A stretch of DNA of 63,433 nucleotides, the filler included, from Octopus bimaculoides (Eukaryota), in assembly GCF_001194135.2 (NCBI RefSeq). It is 4 parts of 4 records of this genome, joined end to end, with 100 filler letters (N's around TTAATTAATTAA, not from the genome) between each part and the next. Parts side by side here need not be neighbours in the genome. Positions count along the whole stretch, not along the records: positions 1 to 27,873 come from NC_069010.1; 3 more parts are not named here. One strand, 5' to 3'. Positions 6,612 to 27,873 of this stretch are shown here, in pieces. Each line of letters begins with the position of its first letter. Positions within the stretch are counted from its first letter, which is position 1. The translations under genes and the position numbers were made by a program. The notes below the pieces were generated by a model. It was not told the origin of the DNA. It did no database searches and saw only the letters and a list, made by a program, of their open reading frames with translations.

Positions 6612-6869
6612 TTAATATTGCTCAAGGTAAACAAACGTATCAAACAAGCACTTTGGAATGGGATAAAGTAATAGCTTTACCCAATGGAAAATGTGTGAAA
6701 AATAAGATGTGGATGTCATCCGGCAAGGCAGTTGACGGTAATTTTGATCATGTTTTCGAACATATGTCATGTACACATACAACATCGGAACAAGATCCAT
6801 ATTGGGAAGTGACGTTGGATAAACCATACATGATATCTCAACTGAGAATATACAATCGAATGACACACT
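6612..6869 (+). CDS. Exon encoding the N-terminal part of an F-type lectin (fucolectin/FTP, F5/8 type C fold) domain
   Basis: ttttcag|TT...CAC T|gtaagt, 258 nt, phase 1-1. Translates VNIAQGKQTYQTST...SSGKAVDGNFDHVFEHMSCTHTTSEQDPYWEVTLDKPYMISQLRIYNRMTH, with the NIAxGK, AVDGN, CTHT, PxWxVxL and IYNR hallmarks. Confidence 0.9.
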
Positions 6870-6999: not shown

Positions 7000-7921
7000 A
7001 TTGGATGGACATGTTGGCGCTGCTGTTTTTAACAATTTCAGTGGCCAGTTAGAGGATTTGTCAGCTCGTATGTGTTCATTCCTGTTGAAATAGCGTATAT
7101 ACAGAGAATTAAAAGAACATTATAATTGTTTCGTGGAATTTGAACTGTTTTCTCTCCACCACTGATTCTATGACAATGGAAATAACTTTTGTTTGCTCTC
7201 TATTTCCACTCCACAATGGTAGAAACTTGTATTGATTGTATTGACAATATTAATGGCTATGAATTAAGAAGATCGGATCCATCCAACAAACAATCTTTTA
7301 TATCTGTAATATCCCTAATGGCTCGTTCATCACTTTGAGCCAGGGACCAAGAGACATTCCTTTCAGTGGAAACATTCCCCTCCCCTGAAAGCCTAGGTCG
7401 TTACATCTGCAAGGAAGGTAAGAGCTTTGGGGATATGCAAAAGACATTGTACTTATTGACTATTTTCAAAAGAGACTCACTATCAATGGAGAGTACAGTG
7501 CCAACATGCTGAGGCAGTTACGAAATGCTATCAATAATAGACGCGCAGGAAATCTGACAAAAGTGGAGTTGTTTCATCAGGCCAATGGGCATGCACACAA
7601 GTCCTAGGTTTCAACGGCTGTTGTGCATGACTATGGCTTTGAACAATTTGAACACCCTCACTATTCTCCTGATTTGGCCCAATCTAATCCTCATCTGTTC
7701 CTCAACATGAAAAAACATGTATGGGTAGCAGTATCGCAGTGATTATGACGTCATATCCGCTGGTATTACTAGTTACTTTTGAAGTCTTCTTTAAACAGTC
7801 AAGTGTCAGCTTACCTGGAATTAAACAATGCAGTAATTAATAAGATGTGTTGAAATTAATGTATGCAAGATTTCATAACTCCAACATAGTCAGCTTATGA
7901 ACTTTTCAGCCCACCCTCATA
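7000..7921 (+). mobile_element. Degenerate mariner (DD34D) transposon in an intron of the lectin gene
   Basis: Frameshifted remnants of the IVLIDY, LFHQxN and EHPxYSPDLAxS...LFxNMKKH transposase segments at about 7300-7780, ending in a mariner-like TIR (AACTTTTCAGCCCACCCTCATA). The 5' boundary is approximate. Confidence 0.75.
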
Positions 7922-8471: not shown

Positions 8472-8654
8472 ATTTCAGGTTGAGCGGATTTAAAGTTTAT
8501 CTTGGATCATCACTTTGTTTTGAGAGTACAAAAGATGAATACAAGAAACAAGTAATCTATATCAAATGTCAAAAACCAGTATATACAAGTAATGTCAAAA
8601 TATCGTTAGAAGGAAAAAAGAAAGCGCTTACTCTTTGTGAAGTGGAAGTAATAC
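8472..8654 (+). CDS. Exon encoding the C-terminal part of the F-type lectin domain
   Basis: ttctag|AT...ATA C|gtaagt, 183 nt, phase 1-1. Translates YFRLSGFKVYLGSSLCFESTKDEYKKQVIYIKCQKPVYTSNVKISLEGKKKALTLCEVEVI; RLxxFxV and LTLCEVEV are FTP hallmarks. Confidence 0.9.
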
Positions 8655-10171: not shown

Positions 10172-10297
10172 CCGATTTGAATTAAAGAATGCTACGATAT
10201 TCAGATAAGAGTTTTCGCTTACAAACCTCAGGAAATTCACAGTTTTACTTTCTACTGGTGTTTCCGTAACAAGGAATTCCTTTTCACATGAAGGACC
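10172..10297 (-). CDS. RPTP second (D2) phosphatase-domain exon
   Basis: tatatag|GGT...CGG|gtaagt, 126 nt, phase 0-0. Translates GPSCEKEFLVTETPVESKTVNFLRFVSENSYLNIVAFFNSNR, a diverged FIxTQxP...TVxDFWRxV...IVxL segment. Confidence 0.7.
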
Positions 10298-10687
10298 CTA
10301 TATATATACATAAAACGCAAACAAGAAGAACAATATAAAAATCAGAATCCAGGCAAAGAAAATTGAACACAATTATGGTCTCACGTAGTATTATGTTTCT
10401 TTTTAATTGCAACAAAGTGGATTCAGTAAGAGAGAAAGAGACATCTTCCTAGAATCTGAGTAGTAACACAAACAAACCGTCATCGACAGGCCAAGTAACA
10501 ATAGCATAGGAGACATTTGGAAAGACCATAACTGATATGGCCACAACTTTAAAAAAAAAAACCCTACAGAATCAACCTGAACAAGCCAAAATTCCATCTT
10601 TGAAATTGTTCTACTCTCAGTATATAATGTTAAATAAAGAAATTTTATACATATGTTATGATAGTAATAATCAAAAATAGTTTGAAT

Positions 10688-10734
<47 letters not shown>

Positions 10735-10748
10735 CGTGNNNNNNNNNN

Positions 10749-10783
<35 letters not shown>

Positions 10784-12414
10784 CGTGTGTTTGTGTTTGG
10801 AAATTAATGAAACATATCGAAACAAAAGAAGATTGAGATATTAAAGATTATTGGAAAATTTAAAGACGATGTCTTTAGATGTGAATAAGATAGGTTAATG
10901 AGAGAGATATTTGAGATGATTCTGGTAAACTCAGTAATTCNNNNNNNNNNAGGTTAATGAGAGAGATATTTGAGATGATTCTGGTAAACTCAGTAATTCT
11001 ATAAGCGATAGGAATGAAGGAAACTCTAAATTTTGTTACTTATATTTATTTATTGTAGCCATGAACTATTTTCTTCAAGTAAACCAATATCTAAGGTAAA
11101 AATATTATTTTTTAAACGGTATGTTAAATCCGTTTNNNNNNNNNNNNNNNNNNNNNNNNNNNNNNNNNNNNNNNNNNNNNNNNNNNNNNNNNNNNNNNNN
11201 NNNNNNNNNNNNNNNNNNNNNNNNNNNNNNNNNNNNNNNNNNNNNNNNNNNNNNNNNNNNNNNNNNNNNNNNNNNNNNNNNNNNNNNNNNNNNNNNNNNN
11301 NNNNNNNNNNNNNNNNNNNNNNNNNNNNNNNNNNNNNNNNNNNNNNNNNNNNNNNNNNNNNNNNNNNNNNNNNNNNNNNNNNNNNNNNNNNNNNNNNNNN
11401 NNNNNNNNNNNNNNNNNNNNNNNNNNNNNNNNNNNNNNNNNNNNNNNNNNNNNNNNNNNNNNNNNNNNNNNNNNNNNNNNNNNNNNNNNNNNNNNNNNGA
11501 AAAATAAGCATGCTGAGCGTTACTTTACGTGTAATATGTTAAAATTCATTCAGTTATAAAATATATTCACTATGTATCAGGCTTTACTGAAAATGTCTTA
11601 GTTATGAGATTATTTGAAATCAAGTATAACTACAACATAATTCATCAATAACATAGAAAATATTTCTTTCATCTTGCTTGTATCAAGCCCAACGTAACAC
11701 TGAACATATTTGACTTAACAAAAAGATGAATGCTGAATTTGAGCTCTGCAAATAGGAAGTGTAGGAATTATTTTAGTTTAATTGTATAAAATTGCTTCGT
11801 TTTTAAGAAGTTGCTATTTAGAAATTAGAGCCGTAATTGGTGGTTTGTGTATCAATTACATTGGTTTTACTTAAGCACTGTTTTTTTTTTGTTACTTTAC
11901 AATTTGGGAGCAATATCACTGAATACCTAATATTATGAAATAGAAAAGAATTGTAATGTTGGTTGTGCCATAACTCATTAGGTTGTGTATATAAATGACG
12001 ACAAGCGTTTATTGTCTCTGTTATCAGGTAAAGGAATATACATATTAAACATAACCGTGATTTTATGTCAACCTCCCCAGCACGGCCCTACCCACAGAAT
12101 TTCATGTCTTCAATTGTCAACTAACTTTCAATCACAAATCTTTAAACAACTAGTGTTTATGGTCGAAAATAAATTCTCAGAATGGGACACAGTAATACCA
12201 AATTTGAAACCAAGTAGTTTAAGAGGATCTGGAGTATTCTTCGAGGATTTTCGTTCTTGATACATTCAAATTCCGCCGAGGTCGACTTTGCCTGTCATCC
12301 TTTCGGGGTTGATANNNNNNNNNNATAAATTAAGTACCAGTTGCGAACTGGGGTGAATCTAATCGACTGGCCCTTTCCCCCAAAATCTGGAGGTCTTGTG
12401 CCTGGAGTAGAAAA

Positions 12415-12680
12415 GATTTTATGTCCTGATGGAAATGTTTTGCCTGCCTGTCACTTGTGTCACCAAAATTGTAAAGGAATTTAGGAAGGTGACCGTGGAA
12501 ATTGCGCAGCTTCGTACTCATATTTGCTCCCAACTTTTGAAAGTTTATTGTCGACTATTTCCACATAGTTGGCTGCCCAGAAAGTCATTTACAACTATTA
12601 AAAATAAATTCTATACTGTTGCGTTAAAGCAATTCATTGATCTTAGAAAGTTCCATCTTCCATCAGTTTTCTAGATTTAT
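12415..12680 (-). mobile_element. Decayed DDE transposase C-terminal fragment, probably Chapaev3/CMC type
   Basis: Reads ...VVNDFLG...NYVEIVD...LGANMSTKLRNFHGHLPKFLYNFGDTSDRQAKHFHQDIK, resembling the MSxKxHFLHSHLDxFPENLGAVSDExGERFHQDI segment. The superfamily label is from memory of that motif. Confidence 0.6.
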
Positions 12681-14869
12681 CTTTTCATTGCTCAGACCGA
12701 GAAATGCTCTACAAATACAGTGAAAGTATCATCTGCTTTTATCCAGAGATTTAACAAACTACTTCGTAATGCCAAGTTCGATACGGGGTAGGGATAGAAT
12801 GATTTTTCCCAGTTGAATTACAGACTAATCAGCCATATTAAATGACCCTGGGACTAATGTTTTATGCGGCCATGCCTTGACCACCCAATGTATTTCTTTC
12901 GCTCTGCTGACTCACATATATAAATTTAGTATTATATTTTTCATGCAAACAATGCGTTTCTCTGAAAAATACATACAGACAGATTGACAGGGAGACATAC
13001 GGACGGGTGGACAGACAGGTAAAGAGATAGATAGACAGATACACAGCCAGACAGAAAGACGTATAAATACACAGCTAGAGAGAGAGAAAGAAAGAAAGAA
13101 AGATAGCTGGATGGATGGATGGATGGATTGATGGAAGTTGCAGGAATTGGAAATATAACTGAAATTCCACAGCTTTACATTCAAGTAGAAAAGAANNNNN
13201 NNNNNNNNNNNNNNNNNNNNNNNNNNNNNNNNNNNNNNNNNNNNNNNNNNNNNNNNNNNNNNNNNNNNNNNNNNNNNNNNNNNNNNNNNNNNNNNNNNNN
13301 NNNNNNNNNNNNNNNNNNNNNNNNNNNNNNNNNNNNNNNNNNNNNNNNNNNNNNNNNNNNNNNNNNNNNNNNNNNNNNNNNNNNNNNNNNNNNNNNNNNN
13401 NNNNNNNNNNNNNNNNNNNNNNNNNNNNNNNNNNNNNNNNNNNNNNNNNNNNNNNNNNNNNNNNNNNNNNNNNNNNNNNNNNNNNNNNNNNNNNNNNNNN
13501 NNNNNNNNNNNNNNNNNNNNNNNNNNNNNNNNNNNNNNNNNNNNNNNNNNNNNNNNNNNNNNNNNNNNNNNNNNNNNNNNNNNNNNNNNNNNNNNNNNNN
13601 NNNNNNNNNNNNNNNNNNNNNNNNNNNNNNNNNNNNNNNNNNNNNNNNNNNNNNNNNNNNNNNNNNNNNNNNNNNNNNNNNNNNNNNNNNNNNNNNNNNN
13701 NNNNNNNNNNNNNNNNNNNNNNNNNNNNNNNNNNNNNNNNNNNNNNNNNNNNNNNNNNNNNNNNNNNNNNNNNNNNNNNNNNNNNNNNNNNNNNNNNNNN
13801 NNNNNNNNNNNNNNNNNNNNNNNNNNNNNNNNNNNNNNNNNNNNNNNNNNNNNNNNNNNNNNNNNNNNNNNNNNNNNNNNNNNNNNNNNNNNNNNNNNNN
13901 NNNNNNNNNNNNNNNNNNNNNNNNNNNNNNNNNNNNNNNNNNNNNNNNNNNNNNNNNNNNNNNNNCTCCAGCTGTACCTGAAAACAGAGATGAATGAGTC
14001 TAAAATTGCATGAACGCAGTGTTGTCAGCAAGCGGTGAATTTTGATATAAAAATCATTCGAGTTTCACAGTCATTAGTTTGGTAAAGAGAGGAGAAAAAC
14101 CTTCGTTTCATGTAAACCTTATTGGACTTGAAGAAGGAAATGACTGGGTGAGATTAATGCAATAACTAGTTTGAACTGTTATGAATCGTATTTAGATGTT
14201 GGAAAAACTGAGGTTCGAATAAGAATGCAAGAAGCCGTAAATTTGAAGCATTGGAACAATTTACATATCTGAAGAGAGAGGAGGTCTTAAAAGTAGTCAG
14301 GCATATGAATCTTTGTATCCTACATAACGTGAATATATTGTTAGAACGCCGTATTACTGTGGTATATGGCTTGAGAGATCCTCCCACATAGATGTACAGA
14401 GCTAAAAGCTCAGACATATCGTTATTAGTCGAGAATCATGTAGCATGTTAATTCAATGCATGGAATTCAGTGAATAATTCTGTAAATAGCTAAAGTTTCA
14501 TACTAACAGGTAAAACCTCTACGTGCATTTTACCCACATGATTTATACAGTGCGTATAAGAAACACATGTGCCAGGAGTAGGAATTCACTATGAATTAAN
14601 NNNNNNNNNTGCGTATAAGAAACACATGTGCCAGGAGTAGGAATTCACTATGAATTAAATATATTACTATAAATGAAAACAGTCGAACGATCTTTTAAGC
14701 TTCGTTATGGAATTAAGAAAGTCCATGTGGATTTCTTCTTGGTGGCGAGTGAAACTTTAGAGTCAATATAGTGACTCTAAAAAGGTAATTATGTGAATGT
14801 AAGAATACAAGATACTGCTAATAAAAGTATCAAATTAATGTGTGGATTCATGTGCATAAATAAATAGCT

Positions 14870-14901
<32 letters not shown>

Positions 14902-15696
14902 NNNNNNNNNNNNNNNNNNNNNNNNNNNNNNNNNNNNNNNNNNNNNNNNNNNNNNNNTGTGTGTGTGTGTGATTTCAAAAGATTGTTTTTCGTTTTCTAA
15001 ACACATTTTTGCCTGAGATATTATTGCTTCATAATTATAAGGAATTTCATTGATTGTCTGCTTNNNNNNNNNNNNNNNNNNNNNNNNNNNNNNNNNNNNN
15101 NNNNNNNNNNNNNNNNNNNNNNNNNNNNNNNNNNNNNNNNNNNNNNNNNNNNNNNNNNNNNNNNNNNNNNNNNNNNNNNNNNNNNNNNNNNNNNNNNNNN
15201 NNNNNNNNNNNNNNNNNNNNNNNNNNNNNNNNNNNNNNNNNNNNNNNNNNNNNNNNNNNNNNNNNNNNNNAGAGAGAGAGAGAGAGAGAAGAATCACTCC
15301 CAAAATCGGGCAGGTATTTTATTTATCGATTGAATAATTATAGGTGAAGCTGACCTCAGCCAAATTTGAAATCAGAGCGCAGACATAATCACGAATANNN
15401 NNNNNNNGCTGACCTCAGCCAAATTTGAAATCAGAGCGCAGACATAATCACGAATACTACAAAGCAATTTGCACGAAGTTTTAATGTTTCTGCCAATTCA
15501 TCACCTTTCNNNNNNNNNNNNNNNNNNNNNNNNNNNNNNNNNNNNNNNNNNNNNNNNNNNNNNNNNNNNNNNNNNNNNNNNNNNNNNNNNNNNNNNNNNN
15601 NNNNNNNNNNNNNNNNNNNNNNNNNNNNNNNNNNNNNNNNNNNNNNNNNNNNNNNNNNNNNNNNNNNNNNNNNNNNNNNNNNNNNNNNNNNNNNNN

Positions 15697-15805
15697 CTTG
15701 CGAAGCTTTTTGATACATGCCAGTACATCAACATCTTGATCACTCACCATTTCATTTAGAAGTATGTCAATGCAAATGTAAGCTCCTGTACGACCAACGC
15801 CATCA
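15697..15805 (-). CDS. RPTP D1 exon (PTP signature loop), 5' part (remainder in N gap)
   Basis: ctctttcag|T GAT GGC GTT GGT CGT ACA GGA..., phase 2 start. Translates CDGVGRTGAYICIDILLNEMVSDQDVDVLACIKKLRK. Confidence 0.92.
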
Positions 15806-16751
15806 CTGAAAGAGGAGCGAAGGGCAATAAAATGATTATGAGAACTTCCAACAATTTAAAAAATAACAAGATAAATACTTGGATTAGGCTCAGAGAACAT
15901 AAATTATTTACAATTCTTATTCAGGAGTAGGAAAAGAAAGAGAATTGAGTAATATTAGAAATGAGATTCTAAATTTGACAGTAACGCGTCTGGCAGTATA
16001 TTCTGTATCACCCACCAAAACAGTTTTAAATAAAATCTTTCTTTAGGGGTGAAAACAATCATTATTGAGGCGACAGATTCTGTTGATTTATGACAAAGTT
16101 AGTTAAAATTTCTTGACTTACTACATCACACATGCCTACATTACTAAGAACCTAGGATGTAAACCTCGGTAATTTTTCTCAGTCAATATCCTATTTTGCG
16201 ATGCTTTCTTTTCTTTAAACCAACTCAATGTTTAGAATTGACTTTTTGTTGACGTGTGTTTTCTTTGATTAAACATAAGTTGACTCTAAAAACGTTTTGA
16301 ATATCATTGTTACACAAAGAATAGAAAACGCAGTAAAAGTTCTACAGAAGCTCATTTGGTTCACTTTAGGCAAAATCTTTGTGGAATTTTACACCTAATG
16401 AATATAATTTTACTACAAAATGCACTATATAATAACAAAACACTTCAAAATTTAACATTTTATGTCATCAAAGCACACACCCACCCATCCACACACGCAC
16501 ACATACACACAAACATAAGTTTTATTTCTCGCTACTCAAGTGAGTCATAAAAAATATAAACAATGCTACATGAGTATATATACAGGCAGCTTCAAATTCA
16601 TCTCTGATACTATCGATTCTCTTTCAGAAATAATGAAAAAAGAAACAACACATTATTATATAGAAAATATAAGTTTGCTTATTATTAATATAATTATATC
16701 TACATACATATATAAAATATAAGTCATGTTGATATAATTATAGTTACAAAC

Positions 16752-16913
16752 CAGCAATGTACGACCAAAGGGTATGATAACTCTTCTCTGATTTTCAAAG
16801 CGTTTCTGAATTCTAAGACATATTCGGCGTGAGGTGGAATGTTATGATCTGGCCNNNNNNNNNNTTTTAAAGAAGAAGTGATTGATTATCCAACTTTCAT
16901 CTTGATAAACTGT
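16752..16913 (-). CDS. RPTP D1 exon (WPD loop to VHC)
   Basis: tttacag|ACA...TGC TG|gtttgt, phase 0-2. Translates TVYQDESWIINHFFFK-x-WPDHNIPPHAEYVLEFRNALKIREELSYPLVVHC. 152 nt are visible and 3 nt inside the 10-N gap would give the usual 155 nt. Confidence 0.9.
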
Positions 16914-17588
16914 CTGTAAATAAAACATGAAAAGGTTTGAAATGAACGACATGGGAGAAAATAAATGAACCACATATAAAGCACTATAACACTGTGTGTG
17001 TAGTACTTATACATTTCTACAGTTTTCAACCGATTTTCAACAAATTTTAGACACACATTATTGATATTGACTTATAAAATCGTTTCATATACTTTGTAGC
17101 ATATTATTGTTGCATAACGAAATACCGCGTACCTACAAGCCATTCATATTTATGTAACACCTTCTAGGACTGTATTTGATATGTAAAATTGGTNNNNNNN
17201 NNNCATATTTATGTAACACCTTCTAGGACTGTATTTGATATGTAAAATTGGTATATTCAATAAGTCGCACCACTGTATTTAGTGGATATTGAAGCAATGT
17301 GTTTGTGGATCATTAAAGAGGTTAGGTGGGTGCAGATGAAAGCGCAACAACTCCCGAAATATGGCATTCCTCTTTTTACATCTTCGATCTCATAGTTTGT
17401 TCATATCTGGCGTCNNNNNNNNNNGATACGAAACGTCGTTACAAAAATCAGGCTATAATTTCTATAGACTATCCGTAGAGATATCCTTAACAGGAGATTT
17501 ATTCACTCCAATAAATCGTGGAATTTAAGTGGAGGATGATACTTAACAGTTGATTAGATTTTGTTCAATCAAATGTGGGTGGGTTCTA

Positions 17589-18351
17589 TATAGGGCTTTC
17601 CTATAAGATGTTATCCACCCCTGATTGGAACTCTCCCGTATGACATGTACGCATGCTNNNNNNNNNNNNNNNNNNNNNNNNNNNNNNNNNNNNNNNNNNN
17701 NNNNNNNNNNNNNNNNNNNNNNNNNNNNNNNNNNNNNNNNNNNNNNNNNNNNNNNNNNNNNNNNNNNNNNNNNNNNNNNNNNNNNNNNNNNNNNNNNNNN
17801 NNNNNNNNNNNNNNNNNNNNNNNNNNNNNNNNNNNNNNNNNNNNNNNNNNNNNNNNNNNNNNNNNNNNNNNNNNNNNNNNNNNNNNNNNNNNNNNNNNNN
17901 NNNNNNNNNNNNNNNNNNNNNNNNNNNNNNNNNNNNNNNNNNNNNNNNNNNNNNNNNNNNNNNNNNNNNNNNNNNNNNNNNNNNNNNNNNNNNNNNNNNN
18001 NNNNNNNNNNNNNNNNNNNNNNNNNNNNNNNNNNNNNNNNNNNNNNNNNNNNNNNNNNNNNNNNNNNNNNNNNNNNNNNNNNNNNNNNNNNNNNNNNNNN
18101 NNNNNNNNNNNNNNNNNNNNNNNNNNNNNNNNNNNNNNNNNNNNNNNNNNNNNNNNNNNNNNNNNNNNNNNNNNNNNNNNNNNNNNNNNNNNNNNNNNNN
18201 NNNNNNNNNNNNNNNNNNNNNNNNNNNNNNNNNNNNNNNNNNNNNNNNNNNNNNNNNNNNNNNNNNNNNNNNNNNNNNNNNNNNNNNNNNNNNNNNNNNN
18301 NNNNNNNNCGCCTAGCCAAGGGAGATAACCTACTTATAGGAAAGCCCTATA
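17589..18351. mobile_element. TIR-bounded DNA element (MITE-like), interior is N
   Basis: 19-bp perfect inverted repeat TATAGGGCTTTCCTATAAG (17589-17607 / 18333-18351) with further imperfect pairing inward. Confidence 0.6.
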
Positions 18352-18619
18352 CATATATGTGCGTGTAGTGAATTAAAGGCAGCATTAATAACTGGCAGTG
18401 ATTCACTTGAGCTCATATGTATAAACCATTCATTAATGAATATGCAGTGCCTCAATAAATATAGACTTCAGGTTTAACTTTGGAGTACATTTAAAAAAAA
18501 AAAAATGGTTTACCATTTGTTTGCAATATCTTGGCTCATTTCATGAACATTAAAAAATCGGAAAATTTTGAATTTGCAGTTTCTGCAAACTTCTAGATTT
18601 TTTTCTCTAGAATTGATTT

Positions 18620-19090
18620 TTGATGGATGGCAAGAGTTAAAGTCCAAAAATTATTGTCTCTGTTGTTTTTTTGTAAGTCTGTTGTAAGACTTTTGCTCGT
18701 TTATATATTTTGTCAAATACGTACGTGTGTTGTTATCTCTGAATAACATTGTTTTATTTGGATGTCTAAAAATAGTAGGGCACTCTGACTGGAATCTACT
18801 GTGAATTCCTGAATCAGTGAATGAAGTATGTTGAGTTTGTTGTTAAAATTTTTGAAGCTCTTCGTTTGATTTGTCCCAAAATGTAAAACGGTCATCCAGT
18901 TTCCATTTATCAATAACATTAAAAGAAACTGATGAAATGCCTGTACTTTTTTCTCGTAAGTAGCCTATTACCAGTTCGGTATACGAGTGTGTGGCTATTT
19001 TACCCAACACTGTTCCTTTTATATGTTTTTCCATCAAAGATGAAGACGTTCACTTTCAGTACTACCTACGTAGCTTCAGATGTGAAGTCA
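18620..19090 (-). mobile_element. Penelope-like element reverse transcriptase fragment (decayed)
   Basis: Across frameshifts: NVFIFDGK...IKGTVLGKIATHSYTELVIGYLREK...KLDDRFTFWDKSNEELQKF/NNKLNILH...LLFLDIQIK...FLDFNSCHPSKI, the PLE RT palm and thumb motifs. Confidence 0.8.
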
Positions 19091-19404
19091 ATTTTGAATC
19101 GCAAAGAATATTAGAAACAATAAAATAGTAGAAAATGAAAAAACAACGGCATTTCACTAATTTTAGACTACATTTTATTCTTTTTAATCCTTTATTTCAG
19201 TCAGTCATTATCCCAGTACTTGTTTATCAAAGCCTGGTAATTATTATATCGTTGTCTTTTGCCGAACCGCTAGGTTACGAGGGCGTAAACTCACCAGCAC
19301 CGGTTATGAACCGGTGATGGGAGGACAAACACAAACACAAAGGAAAACATACATAGATGTAGATGTGGATATATATATATATATATATATATATNNNNNN
19401 NNNN

Positions 19405-19439
<35 letters not shown>

Positions 19440-19667
19440 GATGAGCTTCTTTCATTTTCTGTCTTCCAAATCCGCTTTCGGTCAGCCCGGGGCTCTAATA
19501 GAAAGCACTTATCCAAGGTGTCACGCAGTGGGACTGAACCCGGAAGAATGTGGTTGGGAAGCAAGCTTATTTTACTGAACGCTGATTTCAAAGTCAAAGT
19601 GCTTCTGTTTTAGACCTTTTAAGCAGTATTAGTTTTACATAACATGAAATATTATGGAGAGCCTTAC

Positions 19668-19709
19668 CTTTGAAATAAAAAATCTTCGGTGTATATAGGT
19701 TGAATGACA
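19668..19709 (-). CDS. RPTP D1 exon, 3' part only (remainder in N gap)
   Basis: Emerges from the gap as CHSTYIHRRFFISK|gtaagg, phase 0. Fits the YxxRxFxxxK end of the KCxxYWP exon and is in frame with 16913. Confidence 0.6.
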
Positions 19710-20148
19710 NNNNNNNNNNNNNNNNNNNNNNNNNNNNNNNNNNNNNNNNNNNNNNNNNNNNNNNNNNNNNNNNNNNNNNNNNNNNNNNNNNNNNNNNNNN
19801 NNNNNNNNNNNNNNNNNNNNNNNNNNNNNNNNNNNNNNNNNNNNNNNNNNNNNNNNNNNNNNNNNNNNNNTTTTTTTTTTAATAACTGTATTTCGTATGT
19901 GATGAAAATATGAGAATTGAAATTGGGAAAGTATTTGAGCGTGATGTGACGCGTGTGAAGAGTCAAATATAATCAAGTGATTATTAGTGTAGGAAACGTT
20001 GGTACCGAGAATCTCTATACTTCCATTTCGACTGAGAGTATGTGTAGTATGAACACATTATCAACAGAGTAATTTAGTAAAAATCTTCATACAATCCATT
20101 AAACATTTACGGTTTAACATACCCACAGAACAATAAATACATATATAT

Positions 20149-20190
<42 letters not shown>

Positions 20191-20200
20191 NNNNNNNNNN

Positions 20201-20235
<35 letters not shown>

Positions 20236-20413
20236 GTGTGTGTGTGTGCGCGCTCATGTATTTGTGTGTCTGTGCGTGCACAATACACACATACATACAT
20301 ACATATGTATAAAGGAAATTTCAGAAAGAATTTTTCTGTTGTAAATGTTCCCTGATAGATACGATATCAATTCAATAAAATTATTGTTAAAATCTCTATT
20401 TCTTAAAACGTAC

Positions 20414-20564
20414 CTTTCCTGCGGCATTCATATCTTCCAGTAGAACAATAATATTACATTTTAATTGCCAAATCATCCTCCAAAAGTCTGTCACTGTACT
20501 TNNNNNNNNNNTTTTAATTGCCAAATCATCCTCCAAAAGTCTGTCACTGTACTTTGTGTAGCAC
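20414..20564 (-). CDS. RPTP D1 exon (DFWRMIW motif; true length 98 nt, split by an overlap artefact)
   Basis: ttgaatag|GT GCT...GGA AAG|gtacgt, phase 1-0. After removing the duplicated gap flank it reads GATQSTVTDFWRMIWQLKCNIIVLLEDMNAAGK. Confidence 0.9.
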
Positions 20565-21219
20565 CTATTCAAATAAAAGATGCATAAAATAACACTGAAT
20601 CAGAAATATTTAAAGAAATTTTTATATCACTGTATTCTGTTCATATTNNNNNNNNNNNNNNNNNNNNNNNNNNNNNNNNNNNNNNNNNNNNNNNNNNNNN
20701 NNNNNNNNNNNNNNNNNNNNNNNNNNNNNNNNNNNNNNNNNNNNNNNNNNNNNNNNNNNNNNTAAATTTCCTTGTTATTTGTACTAATCCTGTACGTTAT
20801 ATTTCCCGCAATCAATAAACTCTAAGTCAGGCTCATAGCATGAGAATTGCTTTTCAAAGGCTCAAACATTAGAAGTAATTNNNNNNNNNNNNNNNNNNNN
20901 NNNNNNNNNNNNNNNNNNNNNNNNNNNNNNNNNNNNNNNNNNNNNNNNNNNNNNNNNNNNNNNNNNNNNNNNNNNNNNNNNNNNNNNNNNNNNNNNNNNN
21001 NNNNNNNNNNNNNNNNNNNNNNNNNNNNNNNNNNNNNNNNNNNNNNNNNNNNNNNNNNNNNNNNNNNNNNNNNNNNNNNNNNNNNNNNNNNNNNNNNNNN
21101 NNNNNNNNNNNNNNNNNNNNNNNNNNNNNNNNNNNNNNNNNNNNNNNNNNNNNNNNNNNNNNNNNNNNNNNNNNNNNNNNNNNNNNNNNNNNNNNNNNNN
21201 NNNNNNNNNNNNNNNNNNN

Positions 21220-21251
<32 letters not shown>

Positions 21252-21810
21252 AATGGAATTGTGATGGTGAGCATTTAACACTGAAAAGAAAAATGAAACA
21301 GCGTTTCAACTCAGTGTGGGTATATGCGTGTATGCTTGTGTGTGTTCAAGGGAAGTATGTGAAAGTTTATGCGTGTGAGCCAGCTTTCTTTCAGTAACAA
21401 ACGATCATCGATGTAATATCTCAACAGACAACCACTAGATAACATTGAGAAGTGTATTAATTTGAACTACCATCCGTATTCTATCTGTTGTGTTATACAT
21501 AATTATTACAATTTCATACATCTACACATATAGATATACAAACTCATTAGAGAAAATAATTATTGCCCGAGTGTATCAAGAATATAAAACGACTGCAGTT
21601 GAAAAGTATATTTAAATACACATTTAACAATTCACACATGTGCCGAATTTATTTGTATTAAGAAATTTATGTAATAAATTTTGAATAGGGAGTTTTTACA
21701 ACATCNNNNNNNNNNTAAATTTTGAATAGGGAGTTTTTACAACATCAGCTATAAGTCACGGACTGCTTTTTGTGGCTTTAAGTCGTATGAATTTAGGTTG
21801 GTTTGAAAGG

Positions 21811-21925
21811 AAACGTCACTTCGAAAAAGTTGGTATTTACGTGCCAGCTCCCGTAATTGGTCACGGCCAGCTTTATGTGGCCTTAAGTTGTACAAGAAGG
21901 AAGGAAAACTTAAAAATTCTTTTGA
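21811..21925 (+). mobile_element. Helitron PIF1-like helicase C-terminal fragment
   Basis: FEKVGIYVPAPVIGHGQLYVALSCTRRKENLKILL matches the xxxVGIxLxxPVFxHGQLYVAxSR motif. Confidence 0.8.
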
Positions 21926-23136
21926 AGGAAACAAGCAGTCANNNNNNNNNNAAATTCTTTTGAAGGAAACAAGCAGTCAAGGCATGTTAGCTGCAGATAG
22001 AGTTTTCACACAAAAAATTGGTAATGAAAGAATTTTAAAACTAAAAGCATGGATTTGTATATTATTCATATAGGCGTAGGAGTGGCTGTGTGGTAAGTAG
22101 CTTGCTTAGCAACCACANNNNNNNNNNNNNNNNNNNNNNNNNNNNNNNNNNNNNNNNNNNNNNNNNNNNNNNNNNNNNNNNNNNNNNNNNNNNNNNNNNN
22201 NNNNNNNNNNNNNNNNNNNNNNNNNNNNNNNNNNNNNNNNNNNNNNNNNNNNNNNNNNNNNNNNNNNNNNNNNNNNNNNNNNNNNNNNNNNNNNNNNNNN
22301 NNNNNNNNNNNNNNNNNNNNNNNNNNNNNNNNNNNNNNNNNNNNNNNNNNNNNNNNNNNNNNNNNNNNNNNNNNNNNNNNNNNNNNNNNNNNNNNNNNNN
22401 NNNNNNNNNNNNNNNNNNNNNNNNNNNNNNNNNNNNNNNNNNNNNNNNNNNNNNNNNNNNNNNNNNNNNNNNNNNNNNNNNNNNNNNNNNNNNNNNNNNN
22501 NNNNNNNNNNNNNNNNNNNNNNNNNNNNNNNNNNNNNNNNNNNNNNNNNNNNNNNNNNNNNNNNNNNNNNNNNNNNNNNNNNNNNNNNNNNNNNNNNNNN
22601 NNNNNNNNNNNNNNNNNNNNNNNNNNNNNNNNNNNNNNNNNNNNNNNNNNNNNNNNNNNNNNNNNNNNNNNNNNNNNNNNNNNNNNNNNNNNNNNNNNNN
22701 NNNNNNNNNNNNNNNNNNNNNNNNNNNNNNNNNNNNNNNNNNNNNNNNNNNNNNNNNNNNNNNNNNNNNNNNNNNNNNNNNNNNNNNNNNNNNNNNNNNN
22801 NNNNNNNNNNNNNNNNNNNNNNNNNNNNNNNNNNNNNNNNNNNNNNNNNNNNNNNNNNNNNNNNNNNNNNNNNNNNNNNNNNNNNNNNNNNNNNNNNNNN
22901 NNNNNNNNNNNNNNNNNNAACAGGATAAACTACCCCTATTTTGCAGAGAAAAGTGTAAGTGGCTAGCTCACTCTCACACACTTTCATACATGTTAATGGT
23001 CATGGTTTTTAATATTTTTTTGTCGTTGTAAAATCTTGTTAATATTTCGTTCTTTTATCTTGTTNNNNNNNNNNGTTAATATTTCGTTCTTTTATCTTGT
23101 TTGCAGGATTCTTTATGTGAATTTGTGTGTTGTAAC

Positions 23137-23365
23137 AAATTTTGTTGTGTCTGGGCAGAGTCATACTGCCTTAATATCTAACACACTCACCGGTTCAAGT
23201 TCCACTCATTTATTATTTTTTTCTTCTTGTTTTTCTTTCGCTTTTTCTTTTTTCTATTTTTAAACAGAAANNNNNNNNNNTTTAAATAATATGTAAATGG
23301 AAATTGAATCGGTGAGTGTGTTAGATATTAAAGCAGTATGACTCTCCCTTGACGCAACAAAATTT
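23137..23365. repeat. About 80-bp imperfect inverted repeat in an RPTP intron
   Basis: Arms about 23137-23218 and 23283-23365 share GAGTCATACTGCxTTAATATCTAACACACTCACCG; the spacer contains a 10-N gap. Confidence 0.8.
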
Positions 23366-23398
23366 CTTGATATCTTTGTTGCTGTAATCCATCTACCG

Positions 23399-23675
23399 TG
23401 GAGGTGCAATGGCCCATTGGTTAGGGAAGCGGACTCGCGGTCATAGGATCGCGGTTTCGATTCCCAGNNNNNNNNNNNNNNNNNNNNNNNNNNNNNNNNN
23501 NNNNNNNNNNNNNNNNNNNNNNNNNNNNNNNNNNNNNNNNNNNNNNNNNNNNNNNNNNNNNNNNNNNNNNNNNNNNNNNNNNNNNNNNNNNNNNNNNNNN
23601 NNNNNNNNNNNNNNNNNNNNNNNNNCAAAGGGTCAGCCTTGTCACACTCCGTGTCACGCTGAATATCCCTGAGAA
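23399..23675 (+). mobile_element. tRNA-derived SINE (family D), interior partly N, antisense in an RPTP intron
   Basis: tRNA-like head with A box TGGCCCATTGG and B box GGTTTCGATTCC, followed by non-tRNA body sequence. Confidence 0.65.
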
Positions 23676-23694
23676 TGAAAGGGTTTTGACGTAC

Positions 23695-23768
23695 GCAGAT
23701 GAAGTTTGCATTGATGTAATCTGAAGAAGAAATCTCGTCAGGTCGAAGTTTCACACGTGAATGGTCGT
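23695..23768 (-). CDS. RPTP D1 exon (DxxRVxL / DYINA motifs)
   Basis: atttcag|AC...TGC|gtacgt, 74 nt, phase 1-0. Translates YDHSRVKLRPDEISSSDYINANFIC. Confidence 0.92.
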
Positions 23769-25390
23769 CTGAAATATGCATCGAAAAATTATACACATGT
23801 TAGTTAGTAAGTTATTAGTTATATCAGCAAAAAGTAGAATCTGTAAAGATATCTAAAACTAAAATCATAAATATTGCTTAGGTTACACAAAGTGATTGAA
23901 CAAGTGATATTTGATAAAAAGAAAATAAATACAATAAACATTAGANNNNNNNNNNNNNNNNNNNNNNNNNNNNNNNNNTGCTTGGTAATACCAAGGTAAA
24001 GGGGGTGGGGAGCATGTGAATTTGTAAGAGCGAGAACATAAAAAGAAATAATAGATTGAGACAATATTCCGAATTTTGCATAATTTAAATCGTTCAGTAG
24101 AAATATAATTAGTTATCGGTGGATAAAATATTAGGAATAATTAAGAGATAAATTATGAGATTTTGATCAGCCAGCAAATTACTTTAAAAGAAATTAAAGA
24201 CTTTCCTGAAAAATAAATCAATTTGCTGGATTCAAGCCGGTCACATTCCTTTGAACTCAATATTATCACAAAATTGAATCCTTTTTATACTAATGCAGAA
24301 TCTATTGAGTAATACCATGACATTATTTGTTCAATATAATCTGGGTGCGTATTTCACCTGTCTTTACGTTCTGAGTTCAAATTGCCTTTCATCCTTTCGG
24401 AGTTAATAAATTAAGTACCAGTTGCATACTGGTGGTCTATCTAATCCACTGGCCCATTTCCCAAAAATTTCGGGCCTTGTGCCTAGATTAGAAAAAAATA
24501 TAATCTGGATGCCAGATTTTATAATTGTCTTTAAAAGGCTAGCAATTTCTAGATGCATTTTATTTCAAGGACTCACCAAGCATAAATCTCCCCATTCATA
24601 GAGGTTACAAAAGTATTTANNNNNNNNNNGAAGCATTTAAATGTGTTTGTAGGTATTTCTCATATATCCACTTTCACTTTCACTTTCTGTCGCTCTTATC
24701 ATAACGTTATATCTATTTCTCTGCATATCATTACTTACCAGCTTTACTCGGAGTTTAAATTGAAAAATATATAAATGAGGTAGTCTAGATTAGGTAATTT
24801 ACTTCGAACATAGAAATATTACATAAACCTTTCTACTGAAGGCACANNNNNNNNNNTTACTTCGAACATAGAAATATTACATAAACCTTTCTACTGAAGG
24901 CACAAGACCTTGAAATTTTGTGGGAGGGGACTAGTCGATACATCAATTCTAGTGTTTCACTGGTATTTAATTTATCGATCCCGAAGGATGAAAGACAAAG
25001 NNNNNNNNNNNNNNNNNNNNNNNNNNNNNNNNNNNNNNNNNNNNNNNNNNNNNNNNNNNNNNNNNNNNNNNNNNNNNNNNNNNNNNNNNNNNNNNNNNNN
25101 NNNNNNNNNNNNNNNNNNNNNNNNNNNNNNNNNNNNNNNNNNNNNNNNNNNNNNNNNNNNNNNNNNNNNNNNNNNNNNNNNNNNNNNNNNNNNNNNNNNN
25201 NNNNNNNNNNNNNNNNNNNNNNNNNNNNNNNNNNNNNNNNNNNNNNNNNNNNNNNNNNNNNNNNNNNNNNNNNNNNNNNNNNNNNNNNNNNNNNNNNNNN
25301 NNNNNNNNNNNNNNNNNNNNNNNNNNNNNNNNNNNNNNNNNNNNNNNNNNNNNNNNNGCTTTACAATATATGAAAGAAATCAGTATTTAC

Positions 25391-25478
25391 ATGGAAGTAT
25401 AGTTTTACACTGATTCTTCTTTGCATTCTCAGGTTTCATTCCTTCATTATAAGCCAGTGATAAGGGCTTTGGCAGCCT
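25391..25478 (-). CDS. RPTP D1 exon (KNRY-loop exon)
   Basis: attcacag|AGG...CCA T|gtaaat, 88 nt, phase 0-1, the size and phase typical of this exon in RPTP genes. Translates RLPKPLSLAYNEGMKPENAKKNQCKTILP. Confidence 0.85.
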
Positions 25479-26769
25479 CTGTGAATATAGGAAAATGAGA
25501 GCCTCACAGTGTTAGCAATAACATAAATAACAAGACTAAATTACAGAAGATCGTTCATAAATAACATCATCATTAGCGACACATTATTAAGAATCTAGTA
25601 ACAGTAATTAAAAAATACACTACTCGCAATATAATTAGCTAAAAGTTATTAACAATATACTTAGCGACACAATGGTCTTTGATCTGGGCACAAGAGCAGC
25701 AGTTTTGTTGGGAGTGGATAAGTCGATACTCTAGCTCCCAATATTTGATTGCTATTTTATTTTATCGTCTCCGAAAAGATCAAAGATGATTGCTGTGGGA
25801 TTTGAACTCAGAATGTAAAGAGTTCGATGAAATAACGCAAAACAGTTTTTTCCGATGCAGTAACGATTTTGCCAGCGCACCGTCAATGTCACAGAAGTGA
25901 TACGTTTAGTAAGAAAGTATTAACTACTAACAAAAGGCATATTATTAACACTAGAGTAAATAATACAGTCCTATCAACACAGAACCACGTTAAGTGTACA
26001 CGTGTCTGTGGAGTGCTCAGCCCCTTGCACGTTAATNNNNNNNNNNNNNNNNNNNNNNNNNNNNNNNNNNNNNNNNNNNNNNNNNNNNNNNNNNNNNNNN
26101 NNNNNNNNNNNNNNNNNNNNNNNNNNNNNNNNNNNNNNNNNNNNNNNNNNNNNNNNNNNNNNNNNNNNNNNNNNNNNNNNNNNNNNNNNNNNNNNNNNNN
26201 NNNNNNNNNNNNNNNNNNNNNNNNNNNNNNNNNNNNNNNNNNNNNNNNNNNNNNNNNNNNNNNNNNNNNNNNNNNNNNNNNNNNNNNNNNNNNNNNNNNN
26301 NNNNNNNNNNNNNNNNNNNNNNNNNNNNNNNNNNNNNNNNNNNNNNNNNNNNNNNNNNNNNNNNNNNNNNNNNNNNNNNNNNNNNNNNNNNNNNNNNNNN
26401 NNNNNNNNNNNNNNNNNNNNNNNNNNNNNNNNNNNNNNNNNNNNNNNNNNNNNNNNNNNNNNNNNNNNNNNNNNNNNNNNNNNNNNNNNNNNNNNNNNNN
26501 NNNNNNNNNNNNNNNNNNNNNNNNNNNNNNNNNNNNNNNNNNNNNNNNNNNNNNNNNNNNNNNNNNNNNNNNNNNNNNNNNNNNNNNNNNNNNNNNNNNN
26601 NNNNNNNNNNNNNNNNNNNNNNNNNNNNNNNNNNNNNNNNNNNNNNNNNNNNNNNNNNNNNNNNNNNNNNNNNNNNNNNNNNNNNNNNNNNNNNNNNNNN
26701 NNNNNNNNNNNNNNNNNNNNNNNNNNNNNNNNNNNNNNNNNNNNNNNNNNNNNNNNNNNNNNNNNNNNT

Positions 26770-27185
26770 GCATTGGTCCAGACGCGTTTTCCACTGCTTG
26801 AAGCAGTCCTAGAACTCTTTTCCCACCTCTTCCACATCTGCAAAACGTTTTGCTTTAAGGGCCTTTTCATTCGGCGAAACAAAAAAAAATTGCAGGGAGC
26901 AAAATCGGGTGAATAGGGAGAGTGGGTAAGCAGAATCATGTTTGGTCAAAATCTGCAGGCGCATTGTCATGATGAAATAACCACGCTCCACTTTGCCATT
27001 GGTCGGGGCGTTTTCGTCTCACCACGTCTCGCAAACGCTTCAGAACTTGTAATCAGTCCCACAAGGAAGAACAAATTCTGTGTGTTTAATTCCTTTCGCA
27101 TCAAGGGAGAAAATCACAATCACTTTGACATTGGATTTCACTTGACACGCTTCTTTTGGGTGGAGTGGGCGCTGGTGATATTGAA
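26770..27185 (-). mobile_element. Mariner transposase fragment
   Basis: PKEACQVKSNVKVIVIFSLDAKGIKHTEFV...HHDNAPA...THSPYSPDFAPCNFFLFRRMKR / KRFADVEEV across frameshifts. Confidence 0.85.
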
Positions 27186-27187
27186 TG

Positions 27188-27233
<46 letters not shown>

Positions 27234-27257
27234 NNNNNNNNNNNNNNNNNNNNNNNN

Positions 27258-27302
<45 letters not shown>

Positions 27303-27532
27303 ACATTATAGTAACTCAGGGCTAACAATATAGCAAATAATACATAACTAAAAATAAACTATCACATTACTCTGAAATAAAACATTAACTTATAAATAAT
27401 GACATTGATAACAATAAAATGGTTTACGAATAAACAAAAACTGTTAAAATATTCACGAAAGACAGTCACTGACCNNNNNNNNNNACGAATAAACAAAAAC
27501 TGTTAAAATATTCACGAAAGACAGTCACTGAC

Positions 27533-27716
27533 CAGGAATTCCTTAATAAAGGGTTCAACCTCCTGTTTTTTCTGAGCAACATATGTCAGTAGGTTTAGCT
27601 TTAACGAAGAACTGGCNNNNNNNNNNTTTTCTGAGCAACATATGTCAGTAGGTTTAGCTTTAACGAAGAACTGGCCATGGGGATGTATATACTTTGGTTT
27701 TCGTTCAATGGTATTT
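27533..27716 (-). CDS. Receptor-type protein tyrosine phosphatase, juxtamembrane/wedge exon (true length about 125 nt; contains an assembly overlap artefact)
   Basis: ctctgcag|AA ATA...TTC CTG|gtcagt, phase 1-0. After collapsing the duplicated flanks of the 10-N gap it reads EIPLNENQSIYIPMASSSLKLNLLTYVAQKKQEVEPFIKEFL, matching the LxxYVxxK...FxxEF pattern that precedes D1, and is in frame with 25478. Confidence 0.75.
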
Positions 27717-27873
27717 CTGCAGAGATAAATGATAATAAATATTAATAAGAAAGAATTGCGCAAATATTCTAATATAAATAGTTATGAAGTAGAAATACGA
27801 ACTCTTGCACACACATACACAAATTTGCGCACACTTAAAATCTCGTATATATATATATATATATATATATATA

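What the first reader, a model, noticed from the sequence alone, without database searches (positions are those of the whole stretch)
15697..27716. Receptor tyrosine phosphatase D1 with a rewired active site (KNQC, QGA, WPD, HCCDGVGR)
Seen: seven spliced exons with RPTP-typical sizes and phases rebuild a membrane-proximal D1 domain that keeps the nucleophile Cys, the C(X)5R Arg and WPD. However, KNRY reads KNQC, QGP reads QGA, and the signature is VHC-C-D-GVGRTG instead of VHCSAGxGRTG. Established: the KNRY Tyr sets the depth of the phosphotyrosine pocket, and an Asp at the Ala position of the signature loop is characteristic of the near-inactive IA-2/phogrin (PTPRN/N2, HCSDGAGR) enzymes and many D2 domains. 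Inference: this D1 may be a pseudophosphatase, a substrate trap, or have shifted substrate (for example phosphoinositides). The adjacent Cys-Cys pair could make it redox-switchable.
Basis: partly seen in the sequence, partly recalled or inferred. Interest (0 to 1): 0.72.

Follow-up and report, generated by a model that had tools for sequence, protein, structure and literature searches.

The report
Decaying duplicate octopus phosphatase domain
This is the first phosphatase domain of one of two recent tandem copies inside an octopus-specific receptor tyrosine phosphatase gene. Its odd active-site residues are recent changes found only in this copy, made under relaxed selection, so it is probably a dead or dying enzyme rather than a purposefully rewired one.

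Summary
On the minus strand, seven exon pieces with GT-AG borders encode a classical receptor PTP D1 domain (Pfam PF00102, E=1.4e-39). It reads KNQC, (Q)GA, (W)PD and HC-C-D-GVGRTG. The TG|T junction lies at an intron position shared with Lottia, O. vulgaris and the sister copy, which all have AG|T (Ser).

The domain is incomplete. The 25-nt exon carrying the Q of QGA, about two thirds of the KCxxYWP exon, the first base of the Trp codon and the Q-loop all lie in N gaps.

The window is Octopus bimaculoides chromosome CM046630.1. It is the downstream unit of a roughly 20-kb tandem duplication in an octopus-specific RPTP gene (F5/8-type-C + EGF + TM + D1 + degenerate D2). The upstream unit reads KNQY, WTG and HCSAG. 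The collinear O. vulgaris gene reads KNLH, WPD and HCSAG. A canonical paralogue keeps every motif.

Y→C, S→C and A→D are therefore derived changes private to this copy. Only R→Q is shared with the sister copy. Since the duplication, omega is about 0.5 for this copy and about 1.1 for its sister, against 0.21 long-term.

Best reading: a relaxed, catalytically crippled duplicate, somewhere between pseudophosphatase and pseudogene. It is not a conserved rewired site.

The parts
27533..27716 (-). Exon E0: juxtamembrane and N-terminal part of D1 (EIPLNENQSIYIPMASSSLKLNLLTYVAQKKQEVEPFIKEFL). It contains the false gap 27617-27626 with a 49-nt duplicated overlap.
   Evidence: tblastn to P0001, P0085 and P0087. 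DNA and borders. Overlap.
25391..25478 (-). Exon E1 (88 nt, phase 0 to 1): RLPKPLSLAYNEGMKPENAKKNQCKTILP. KNQC lies at 25418..25407.
23695..23768 (-). Exon E2 (74 nt, phase 1 to 0): (Y)DHSRVKLRPDEISSSDYINANFIC.
20414..20564 (-). Exon E4 (98 nt after collapsing false gap 20502-20511): (G)ATQSTVTDFWRMIWQLKCNIIVLLEDMNAAGK. The Ala codon GCT lies at 20562..20560. This exon is used by RefSeq model XP_052834032.1.
19668..19709 (-). 3' tail of exon E5 (CHSTYIHRRFFISK). The rest, including KCxxYWP, is hidden in gap 19710-19870.
16752..16913 (-). Exon E6 (phase 0 to 2): TVYQDESWIINHFFFK-[real 10-N gap]-(W)PDHNIPPHAEYVLEFRNALKIREELSYPLVVHC plus TG.
15697..15805 (-). Exon E7 (phase 2; the 3' end is lost in gap 15510-15696): T + DGVGRTGAYICIDILLNEMVSDQDVDVLACIKKLRK.
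10178..10297 (-). Exon of the degenerate second (D2-like) domain: GPSCEKEFLVTETPVESKTVNFLRFVSENSYLNIVAFFNS. It is collinear with O. vulgaris L004 17251-17376.

Best explanation
The window is Octopus bimaculoides chromosome CM046630.1. Its minus strand carries the D1 exons of the downstream unit of a roughly 20-kb tandem duplication. The duplicated unit holds the last EGF exon, the TM exon, the juxtamembrane exon and D1 exons E0-E7. It lies inside an octopus-specific receptor PTP locus with the architecture F5/8-type-C domain + EGF repeats + TM + D1 + degenerate D2.

This paralogue lineage had already lost the Arg of KNRY before the duplication. After the duplication both units drifted under relaxed selection:
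- The upstream unit lost the WPD Asp (WTG).
- This unit acquired Y→C (KNQC), S→C and A→D (HCCDG), an in-frame codon deletion, and several other changes at conserved positions.
- The S→C change also weakens the exon-6 splice donor, from AG|GT to TG|GT.

Inference: if the domain is made at all, it cannot hydrolyse phosphotyrosine efficiently. There is no Tyr to stack on pTyr, and an acidic side chain sits at the C+2 Ala next to the nucleophile. It could act at most as a non-catalytic binding or scaffold module. It is more likely a redundant copy on its way to becoming a pseudogene.

Shown here: the locus structure, the polarity of the substitutions and the relaxed constraint. Inferred: the loss of activity and the expression status.
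For: - Identity: window 10396-27873 equals L003 60040-42563 at 100%.
- Two units: unit A has E0-E7 at L003 20998-32900, and unit B is the window. A second EGF exon and a TM-like exon lie between the units. The units are 80-98% identical at the nucleotide level, introns included.
- Only unit B continues collinearly into the O. vulgaris E8/D2 region.
- Polarised changes since the duplication: this copy has 10 synonymous and 19 non-synonymous (omega about 0.49; P=0.057 against neutrality, P=0.02 against omega 0.21). The sister copy has 5 and 21 (omega about 1.08).
- Copy against copy: omega 0.67 (bootstrap 0.39-1.29), dS 0.16.
- O. vulgaris against either copy: omega 0.45-0.52.
- Long-term omega against the canonical O. 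sinensis copy is 0.21.
- No RefSeq or UniProt model found here uses this unit's E0-E2, E6 or E7.
- Literature: the Tyr of KNRY stacks on pTyr and sets pocket depth (PMC7320164). PTPD2 lacks that Tyr and is inactive on phosphopeptides (PMC2638020). Ala→Ser at C+2 alone inactivates HD-PTP and back-mutation restores activity (PMC2661844).
Against: - No stop codon or frameshift occurs in any visible exon, and all visible splice sites are canonical.
- This copy's omega of about 0.5 is borderline below neutrality (P=0.057), so some purifying selection may persist.
- It is the unit that is contiguous with E8 and D2, so it could be the unit actually used.
- RefSeq model XP_052834032.1 includes this unit's exon E4.
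- The assembly is very gappy. E3, most of E5 and the Q-loop are unseen, so neither intactness nor disruption can be shown.
- The branch counts are small: 29 and 26 changes over 196 codons.
Confidence: 0.6

Rival explanations
1. One reading: a selected, functionally rewired D1. It would be a dedicated pseudophosphatase or substrate trap, a redox switch using the Cys-Cys pair, or an enzyme with shifted substrate such as phosphoinositides.
For: - The nucleophile Cys, the C(X)5R Arg and (apparently) the WPD Asp are retained, with open frames and canonical splice sites.
- Omega of about 0.5 is somewhat below neutral.
- A precedent exists for a D1 pseudophosphatase that binds substrates and is redox-sensitive: PTPRU (PMC7320164).
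- The paralogue lineage has altered its pTyr loop in two species, KNLH and KNQY/KNQC. That pattern could reflect a long-standing non-catalytic role.
Against: - HCCDG and the Cys of KNQC are private to one copy of a recent duplication with dS 0.16.
- The sister copy and the O. vulgaris orthologue keep HCSAG.
- The sister copy has a different lesion (WTG). That is what drift predicts, not a shared design.
- There is no excess of non-synonymous change (omega below 1), so no sign of positive selection.
- No transcript or protein model containing these exons was found.
Confidence: 0.13
2. A fully dead pseudo-exon block. This unit would never be spliced into a productive mRNA. Only the upstream unit, or neither unit, would be used, and the open frames would simply reflect the youth of the duplication.
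For: - All database models use the upstream unit's E0-E3 and E5-E7 (P0238-P0240 and P0087).
- Including both units in series would break the frame, because E7 ends in phase 0 and E0 starts in phase 1.
- The exon-6 donor is weakened to TG|GT.
- E3 is not visible for this unit.
- O. vulgaris models of the orthologue skip E6-E7 altogether.
Against: - This unit, not the upstream one, is followed by E8 and D2.
- Its omega (0.49) is lower than that of the upstream unit (1.08).
- RefSeq uses its E4.
- There are no disabling mutations in about 200 visible codons.
Confidence: 0.2
3. An assembly or consensus artefact. The odd codons would come from sequencing errors, or from a chimeric short-read scaffold that mixes paralogues.
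For: - The scaffold is extremely fragmented, with 47 N runs, 49-nt duplicated overlaps and a break of collinearity at gap 10059-10158.
- No independent read-level check was possible.
Against: - The substitutions sit within contigs, not at gap edges.
- They are embedded in a general 10-19% divergence from the sister copy that includes synonymous and intronic differences.
- R→Q and the Cys of NFIC are shared by both copies.
Confidence: 0.05

Closest known systems
Sister unit in the same locus (O. bimaculoides XP_052834032.1 / UniProt A0A0L8G1J5 + A0A0L8G1I8; L003 20998-32900)
   Same: It has the same exon structure and is 80-98% identical at the nucleotide level. It shares KNQ-, NFIC and a near-identical exon 7 (GVGRTGAYICIDILLNEM.SDQDVDVLACIKKLRK).
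   Different: It reads KNQY, WTG instead of WPD, and a canonical HCSAGVGRTG. Its omega since the duplication is about 1.1.
Octopus vulgaris paralogues CAI9733298.1 (canonical) and CAI9733300.1/CAI9733306.1 (second paralogue, collinear with the window)
   Same: They share the architecture F5/8-type-C + EGF + TM + D1 + degenerate D2. Introns are collinear with the window at about 75% identity.
   Different: The canonical copy has KNRY, QGP, WPD and HCSAG. The second paralogue has KNLH but WPDHD and HCSAG.
Human PTPRU D1 (a receptor PTP whose D1 is a pseudophosphatase; PMC7320164)
   Same: It is the D1 of a receptor PTP. It keeps the catalytic Cys but has a non-canonical pTyr-recognition loop and a P-loop variant. 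It is predicted or shown to be inactive and could still bind substrates.
   Different: PTPRU's changes (GSRQ, WPE, a Thr in the P-loop) are conserved across species, and its redox partner is a backdoor Cys. Here the changes are private to one recent duplicate and WPD is kept.
IA-2/phogrin (PTPRN/PTPRN2)
   Same: It has Asp at the C+2 position of the signature (HCSDGAGR) and a non-Tyr residue in KNRY (KNRH).
   Different: IA-2 has a single PTP domain, WPA in place of WPD and a dense-core-vesicle ectodomain. Here the Asp arose recently from Ala, as the outgroups show, and a D2 follows. The resemblance is convergent, not orthology.
HD-PTP (PTPN23) and PTPD2 (PTPN14)
   Same: In HD-PTP, replacing the C+2 Ala (with Ser) inactivates the enzyme (PMC2661844). 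In PTPD2, loss of the KNRY Tyr abolishes phosphopeptide activity (PMC2638020).
   Different: Both are non-receptor PTPs, and their substitutions are conserved among orthologues.

Membership tests
Classical (class I Cys-based) protein tyrosine phosphatase domain, Pfam PF00102 | Significant match to the Y_phosphatase profile | tested here: met
   E=1.4e-39, 136.6 bits for the concatenated visible exons. The best solved relatives are receptor PTP D1 domains.
Classical (class I Cys-based) protein tyrosine phosphatase domain, Pfam PF00102 | HC(X)5R signature with the nucleophile Cys and the Arg | tested here: met
   CAT TGC ... CGT across the 16752/15805 junction. The junction lies at a conserved intron position.
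Catalytically competent classical PTP | KNRY pTyr-recognition loop with Arg and Tyr | tested here: not met
   It reads KNQC at 25418..25407.
Catalytically competent classical PTP | Ser at C+1 and Ala at C+2 of VHCSAGxGR[ST]G | tested here: not met
   Cys and Asp occupy these positions. Both are derived relative to the outgroups.
Catalytically competent classical PTP | WPD general-acid Asp | tested here: inconclusive
   CCA GAT is present. Only GG of the Trp codon is visible, next to a real gap inside the exon.
Catalytically competent classical PTP | Q-loop (QTxxQYxF) | not testable with these tools
   It is hidden in gaps 15510-15696 and 13196-13965. The family's canonical member reads MVQKRIQLEFIY.
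Tandem-domain receptor PTP (D1 + D2) | TM segment upstream and a second PTP-like domain downstream on the same strand | tested here: met
   A TM-like exon lies at L003 36892-36972, upstream of the window. A D2 exon lies at window ~10297..10178 and is collinear with O. vulgaris D2.
IA-2/phogrin (PTPRN/N2, R8) | The Asp at C+2 is ancestral to the family, combined with WPA and a single PTP domain | tested here: not met
   The outgroups and the sister copy have Ala. WPD is retained and a D2 exon is present.
Conserved pseudophosphatase (PTPRU-like) | Inactivating substitutions conserved among orthologues | tested here: not met
   HCCDG and the Cys of KNQC are absent from the sister copy and from O. 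vulgaris. Only the loss of the KNRY Arg is shared.

The most novel reading that the evidence does not exclude
The second paralogue of this octopus-specific F5/8C-EGF receptor PTP family may be a true D1 pseudophosphatase lineage, comparable to human PTPRU. Its pTyr loop is degenerate in two species (KNLH; KNQY/KNQC). In O. bimaculoides it carries two alternative D1 cassettes that could be used mutually exclusively. The HCCDG cassette would then give a non-catalytic, possibly redox-sensitive binding module.
Probability: 0.1. Interest if true: 0.6.

Novelty: new member of a known kind. Interest (0 to 1): 0.3.

Why it matters
If the copy is expressed, it would be another natural case of a receptor PTP whose membrane-proximal domain has lost catalysis. 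Only PTPRU is well documented in humans. It would also be a snapshot of how such pseudoenzymes arise after duplication: two sister cassettes have been hit at different catalytic motifs. If it is not expressed, it is an ordinary young pseudo-copy. In practical terms, the case shows that the public gene model for this locus (annotated as 'MEGF10') is a chimera of two duplicated units across assembly gaps. It also shows that the 10-N gaps in this assembly duplicate 43-49 nt inside exons.

Tried and rejected
- A search for the missing mini-exon E3 and for the KCxxYWP part of E5 in the window, by motif scan and short blastn, found nothing. L003 holds only the upstream unit's E3, at 25891-25915.
- The 'WPD' at 7584..7576 (minus strand) was considered as a D2 or second WPD loop and rejected. 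It lies in an intron of the plus-strand 5' exons, in sequence also present in O. sinensis L001 and L003. It aligns only weakly to the YWPDE motif.
- IA-2 orthology was considered because of HC.DG and LIDxxLNxM-like residues. It was rejected on outgroup polarity and architecture.
- DNA of the O. vulgaris gene for P0237 could not be fetched because its range is too long. P0086 is not on record. P0236 gave L004 instead.
- Pfam found nothing in the transposon-like ORF fragments.
- Two word-index protein searches returned only proteins of about 300 aa or less and missed the sister copy, which is hidden behind its cluster representative.
- Structure prediction was not attempted because about 40 residues of the domain core are unseen.
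Full report
**What is in the sequence**

The window is 34% G+C and is broken by 47 runs of N. On the minus strand I find seven exon pieces of a classical PTP domain, each with an AG acceptor and a GT donor.

| Exon | Window coordinates (minus strand) | Encodes |
|---|---|---|
| E0 | 27716..27533 | juxtamembrane and N-terminal part of D1 |
| E1 | 25478..25391 | ...KKNQCKTILP |
| E2 | 23768..23695 | (Y)DHSRVKL...DYINANFIC |
| E4 | 20564..20414 | (G)ATQSTVTDFWRMIWQLKCNIIVLLEDMNAAGK |
| E5, last 42 nt | 19709..19668 | CHSTYIHRRFFISK |
| E6 | 16913..16752 | TVYQDESWIINHFFFK-gap-(W)PDHNIPP...PLVVHC + TG |
| E7 | 15805..15697 | T + DGVGRTGAYICIDILLNEMVSDQDVDVLACIKKLRK, then a gap |

The concatenated exons match Pfam Y_phosphatase at E=1.4e-39. 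They align over their length to D1 domains of PTPsigma, PTPalpha, LAR, PTPkappa and others.

**Gaps, tested first as requested**

Most 10-N gaps are not gaps. The sequence on the two sides overlaps exactly. The overlap is 49 nt at 17194-17203 and at 27617-27626, which lies inside E0. It is 43 nt at 20502-20511, which lies inside E4. Collapsing each overlap gives a continuous frame.

The 10-N gap at 16855-16864 lies inside E6 and has no overlap. The frame holds if 3 nt are missing. That is what the sister copy shows at this spot (TTT AAA AAA TGG). Only GG of the Trp codon is actually visible.

Three parts of the domain are unseen:
- the 25-nt mini-exon E3 (NQRYIACQ+G in relatives), so the Q of 'QGA' is inferred;
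- about two thirds of E5 (KCxxYWP...), hidden in gap 19710-19870;
- the end of E7 and the Q-loop exon, hidden in gaps 15510-15696 and 13196-13965.

**The critical junction**

The TG|T codon is formed at an intron that splits the Ser codon as AG|T in three relatives. These are Lottia gigantea, Octopus vulgaris and the sister copy in the same genome. The same change turns the donor from AG|GT into TG|GT. By inference, that should weaken a donor whose intronic part (GTTTGT) is already poor.

**Where the window comes from**

An exhaustive profile search with the best first hit (O. sinensis P0001) found three octopus clusters. They are named:
- O. vulgaris CAI9733298/299, the canonical copy;
- O. 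vulgaris CAI9733300/301/306, a second paralogue;
- O. bimaculoides XP_052834032.1 with UniProt A0A0L8G1J5 and A0A0L8G1I8.

Fetching the O. bimaculoides locus (L003, chromosome CM046630.1) showed that window 10396-27873 is L003 60040-42563 at 100% identity. The full-length canonical protein (P0235, 1022 aa) has an F5/8-type-C domain, EGF-like repeats, a TM segment, a canonical D1 (KNRY, QGP, WPDHG, HCSAGVGRTG) and a degenerate D2 (VHCRKNFHKSG). A D2 exon of the window's gene lies at about 10297..10178.

**A tandem duplication**

L003 holds two units.
- Unit A spans L003 from about 16.4 to 34.3 kb. It carries the last EGF exon, TM, juxtamembrane exon, E0-E3 and E5-E7.
- Unit B starts with an EGF exon at 34474-34551 and a TM-like exon at 36892-36972. 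It then carries E0-E7, which is the window.

The units are 80-98% identical, introns included. Only unit B runs on collinearly with O. vulgaris into E8 and D2. RefSeq model XP_052834032.1 is a chimera. It joins unit A's E0-E3 to unit B's E4 and then reads into the intron (...GKVRFKK*). No model found here uses unit B's E0-E2, E6 or E7.

**Motif states across the copies**

| Copy | pTyr loop | QGP | WPD loop | P-loop |
|---|---|---|---|---|
| Unit A | KNQY | unseen (E4 in a gap) | WTGHV | HCSAGVGRTG |
| Unit B (window) | KNQC | (Q)GA | (W)PDHN | HCCDGVGRTG |
| O. vulgaris second paralogue | KNLH | QGP | WPDHD | HCSAGVGRTG |
| Canonical copies | KNRY | QGP | WPDHG | HCSAGVGRTG |

I used O. sinensis (E0-E2) and O. 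vulgaris (E5-E7) as outgroups. Y→C, S→C and A→D are all derived on the window's copy. P→T and D→G (WTG) are derived on unit A. R→Q and the Cys of NFIC predate the duplication. QGA by itself is unremarkable, because otherwise canonical Mercenaria PTPs also have it.

**Selection**

| Comparison | dS | omega |
|---|---|---|
| Window vs canonical O. sinensis copy (129 codons) | 0.86 | 0.21 |
| O. vulgaris second paralogue vs either O. bimaculoides unit (about 100 codons) | 0.33-0.40 | 0.45-0.52 |
| Unit A vs unit B (196 codons) | 0.16 | 0.67 (bootstrap 0.39-1.29) |

Polarised changes since the duplication are as follows.
- Unit A has 5 synonymous and 21 non-synonymous changes, giving omega of about 1.08. 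That is indistinguishable from neutral.
- Unit B has 10 synonymous and 19 non-synonymous changes, giving omega of about 0.49. P is 0.057 against neutrality and 0.02 against omega 0.21.

The catalytic-core exons of this paralogue lineage are weakly constrained, and more weakly still since the duplication. The numbers are small. They cannot separate a weakly selected non-catalytic protein from a young pseudogene.

**Mechanistic reading**

From the literature:
- The Tyr of KNRY stacks on the pTyr ring and sets the depth of the pocket (PMC7320164).
- PTPD2, which lacks that Tyr, is inactive on phosphopeptides (PMC2638020).
- The Ala at C+2 is so critical that Ala→Ser alone inactivates HD-PTP, and back-mutation restores activity (PMC2661844).
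- IA-2, which has a variant at this position, is inactive. According to the Magistrelli et al. 1996 title cited in PMC2661844, substituting two variant residues reconstitutes its activity.

With Gln and Cys in the pTyr loop and Cys and Asp next to the nucleophile, I infer that this D1 has little or no pTyr phosphatase activity. A vicinal Cys-Cys redox switch or a lipid substrate is possible in principle. Nothing here supports either idea.

**Verdict**

The 'rewired active site' is not a conserved design. It is a set of private, recent substitutions in one of two tandem duplicates that are decaying at different catalytic motifs. The duplicates sit in a fast-evolving, octopus-specific RPTP cluster. 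This is a new member of a known kind (a degenerating or pseudo-phosphatase paralogue) and is of modest interest.

Noticed in passing
window + strand 3495-3680, 6611-6862, 8477-8656 (and 9831-10058): These are exons for an EGF-like repeat and an F5/8-type-C domain of a family member on the opposite strand. They are 51-75% identical to the paralogues, and 6611-6862 hits Pfam F5_F8_type_C_2 at E=1e-7. Segment 9831-10058 is 100% identical to L003 16341-16568, and 1-356 is 98.9% identical to L003 7852-8207. Collinearity with O. vulgaris stops at gap 10059-10158. The block is therefore either an inverted partial duplicate or a scaffold misjoin.
   Followed up: partly
10-N gaps throughout, e.g. 477-486, 4621-4630, 10941-10950, 14600-14609, 15398-15407, 17194-17203, 20502-20511, 27475-27484, 27617-27626: These are false gaps. 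The 43-49 nt on either side are exact duplicates, which looks like a k-mer overlap left unmerged by the assembler. Where such a gap falls inside an exon (E0, E4), it artificially repeats 14-16 residues.
   Followed up: yes
L003 10001-50040 (RefSeq XP_052834032.1, named 'multiple EGF-like domains protein 10'): The public gene model is a chimera of the two duplicated units. It joins unit A's E0-E3 to unit B's E4 and ends in intron read-through (VRFKK*). Its name hides the phosphatase domain. Older models (A0A0L8G1J5, A0A0L8G1I8) split unit A into two genes.
   Followed up: yes
L004 (O. vulgaris OX597827.1) 8797-10024, and proteins P0237 and P0236: The O. vulgaris models of the second paralogue skip the intact WPD and signature exons (E6-E7). 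The skip is in frame, from E5 to E8. Two near-identical E8-D2 sets exist, differing by 1 aa. This hints at catalytic-core-less isoforms and at recent duplication in that species too.
   Followed up: partly
window minus strand about 26770-27110: ORF fragments here resemble a mariner/Tc1-type transposase (…HHDNAP…, …SPYSPDFAPCNFFLF…) and are split over three frames. The resemblance is my own reading. Pfam gave no hit for the fragments.
   Followed up: partly
window minus strand about 18330-19050: A run of ORF fragments in an intron (e.g. …FLDFNSCHP…) looks like a decayed retroelement. Pfam gave no hit.
   Followed up: partly
window minus strand 7584..7576: A 'WPD' (…CVHAHWPDETTPL…) caught by the motif scan is a chance match. 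It lies in an intron of the plus-strand 5' exons, in sequence shared with L001 6040-6310 and L003 12413-13267.
   Followed up: yes
window 19278-19404, 20110-20330, 21219-21345, 27141-27358: Long (TA)n, (CA)n/(TG)n and (CACA/TATA)-type microsatellites flank many of the assembly gaps. They probably caused the contig breaks.
   Followed up: no
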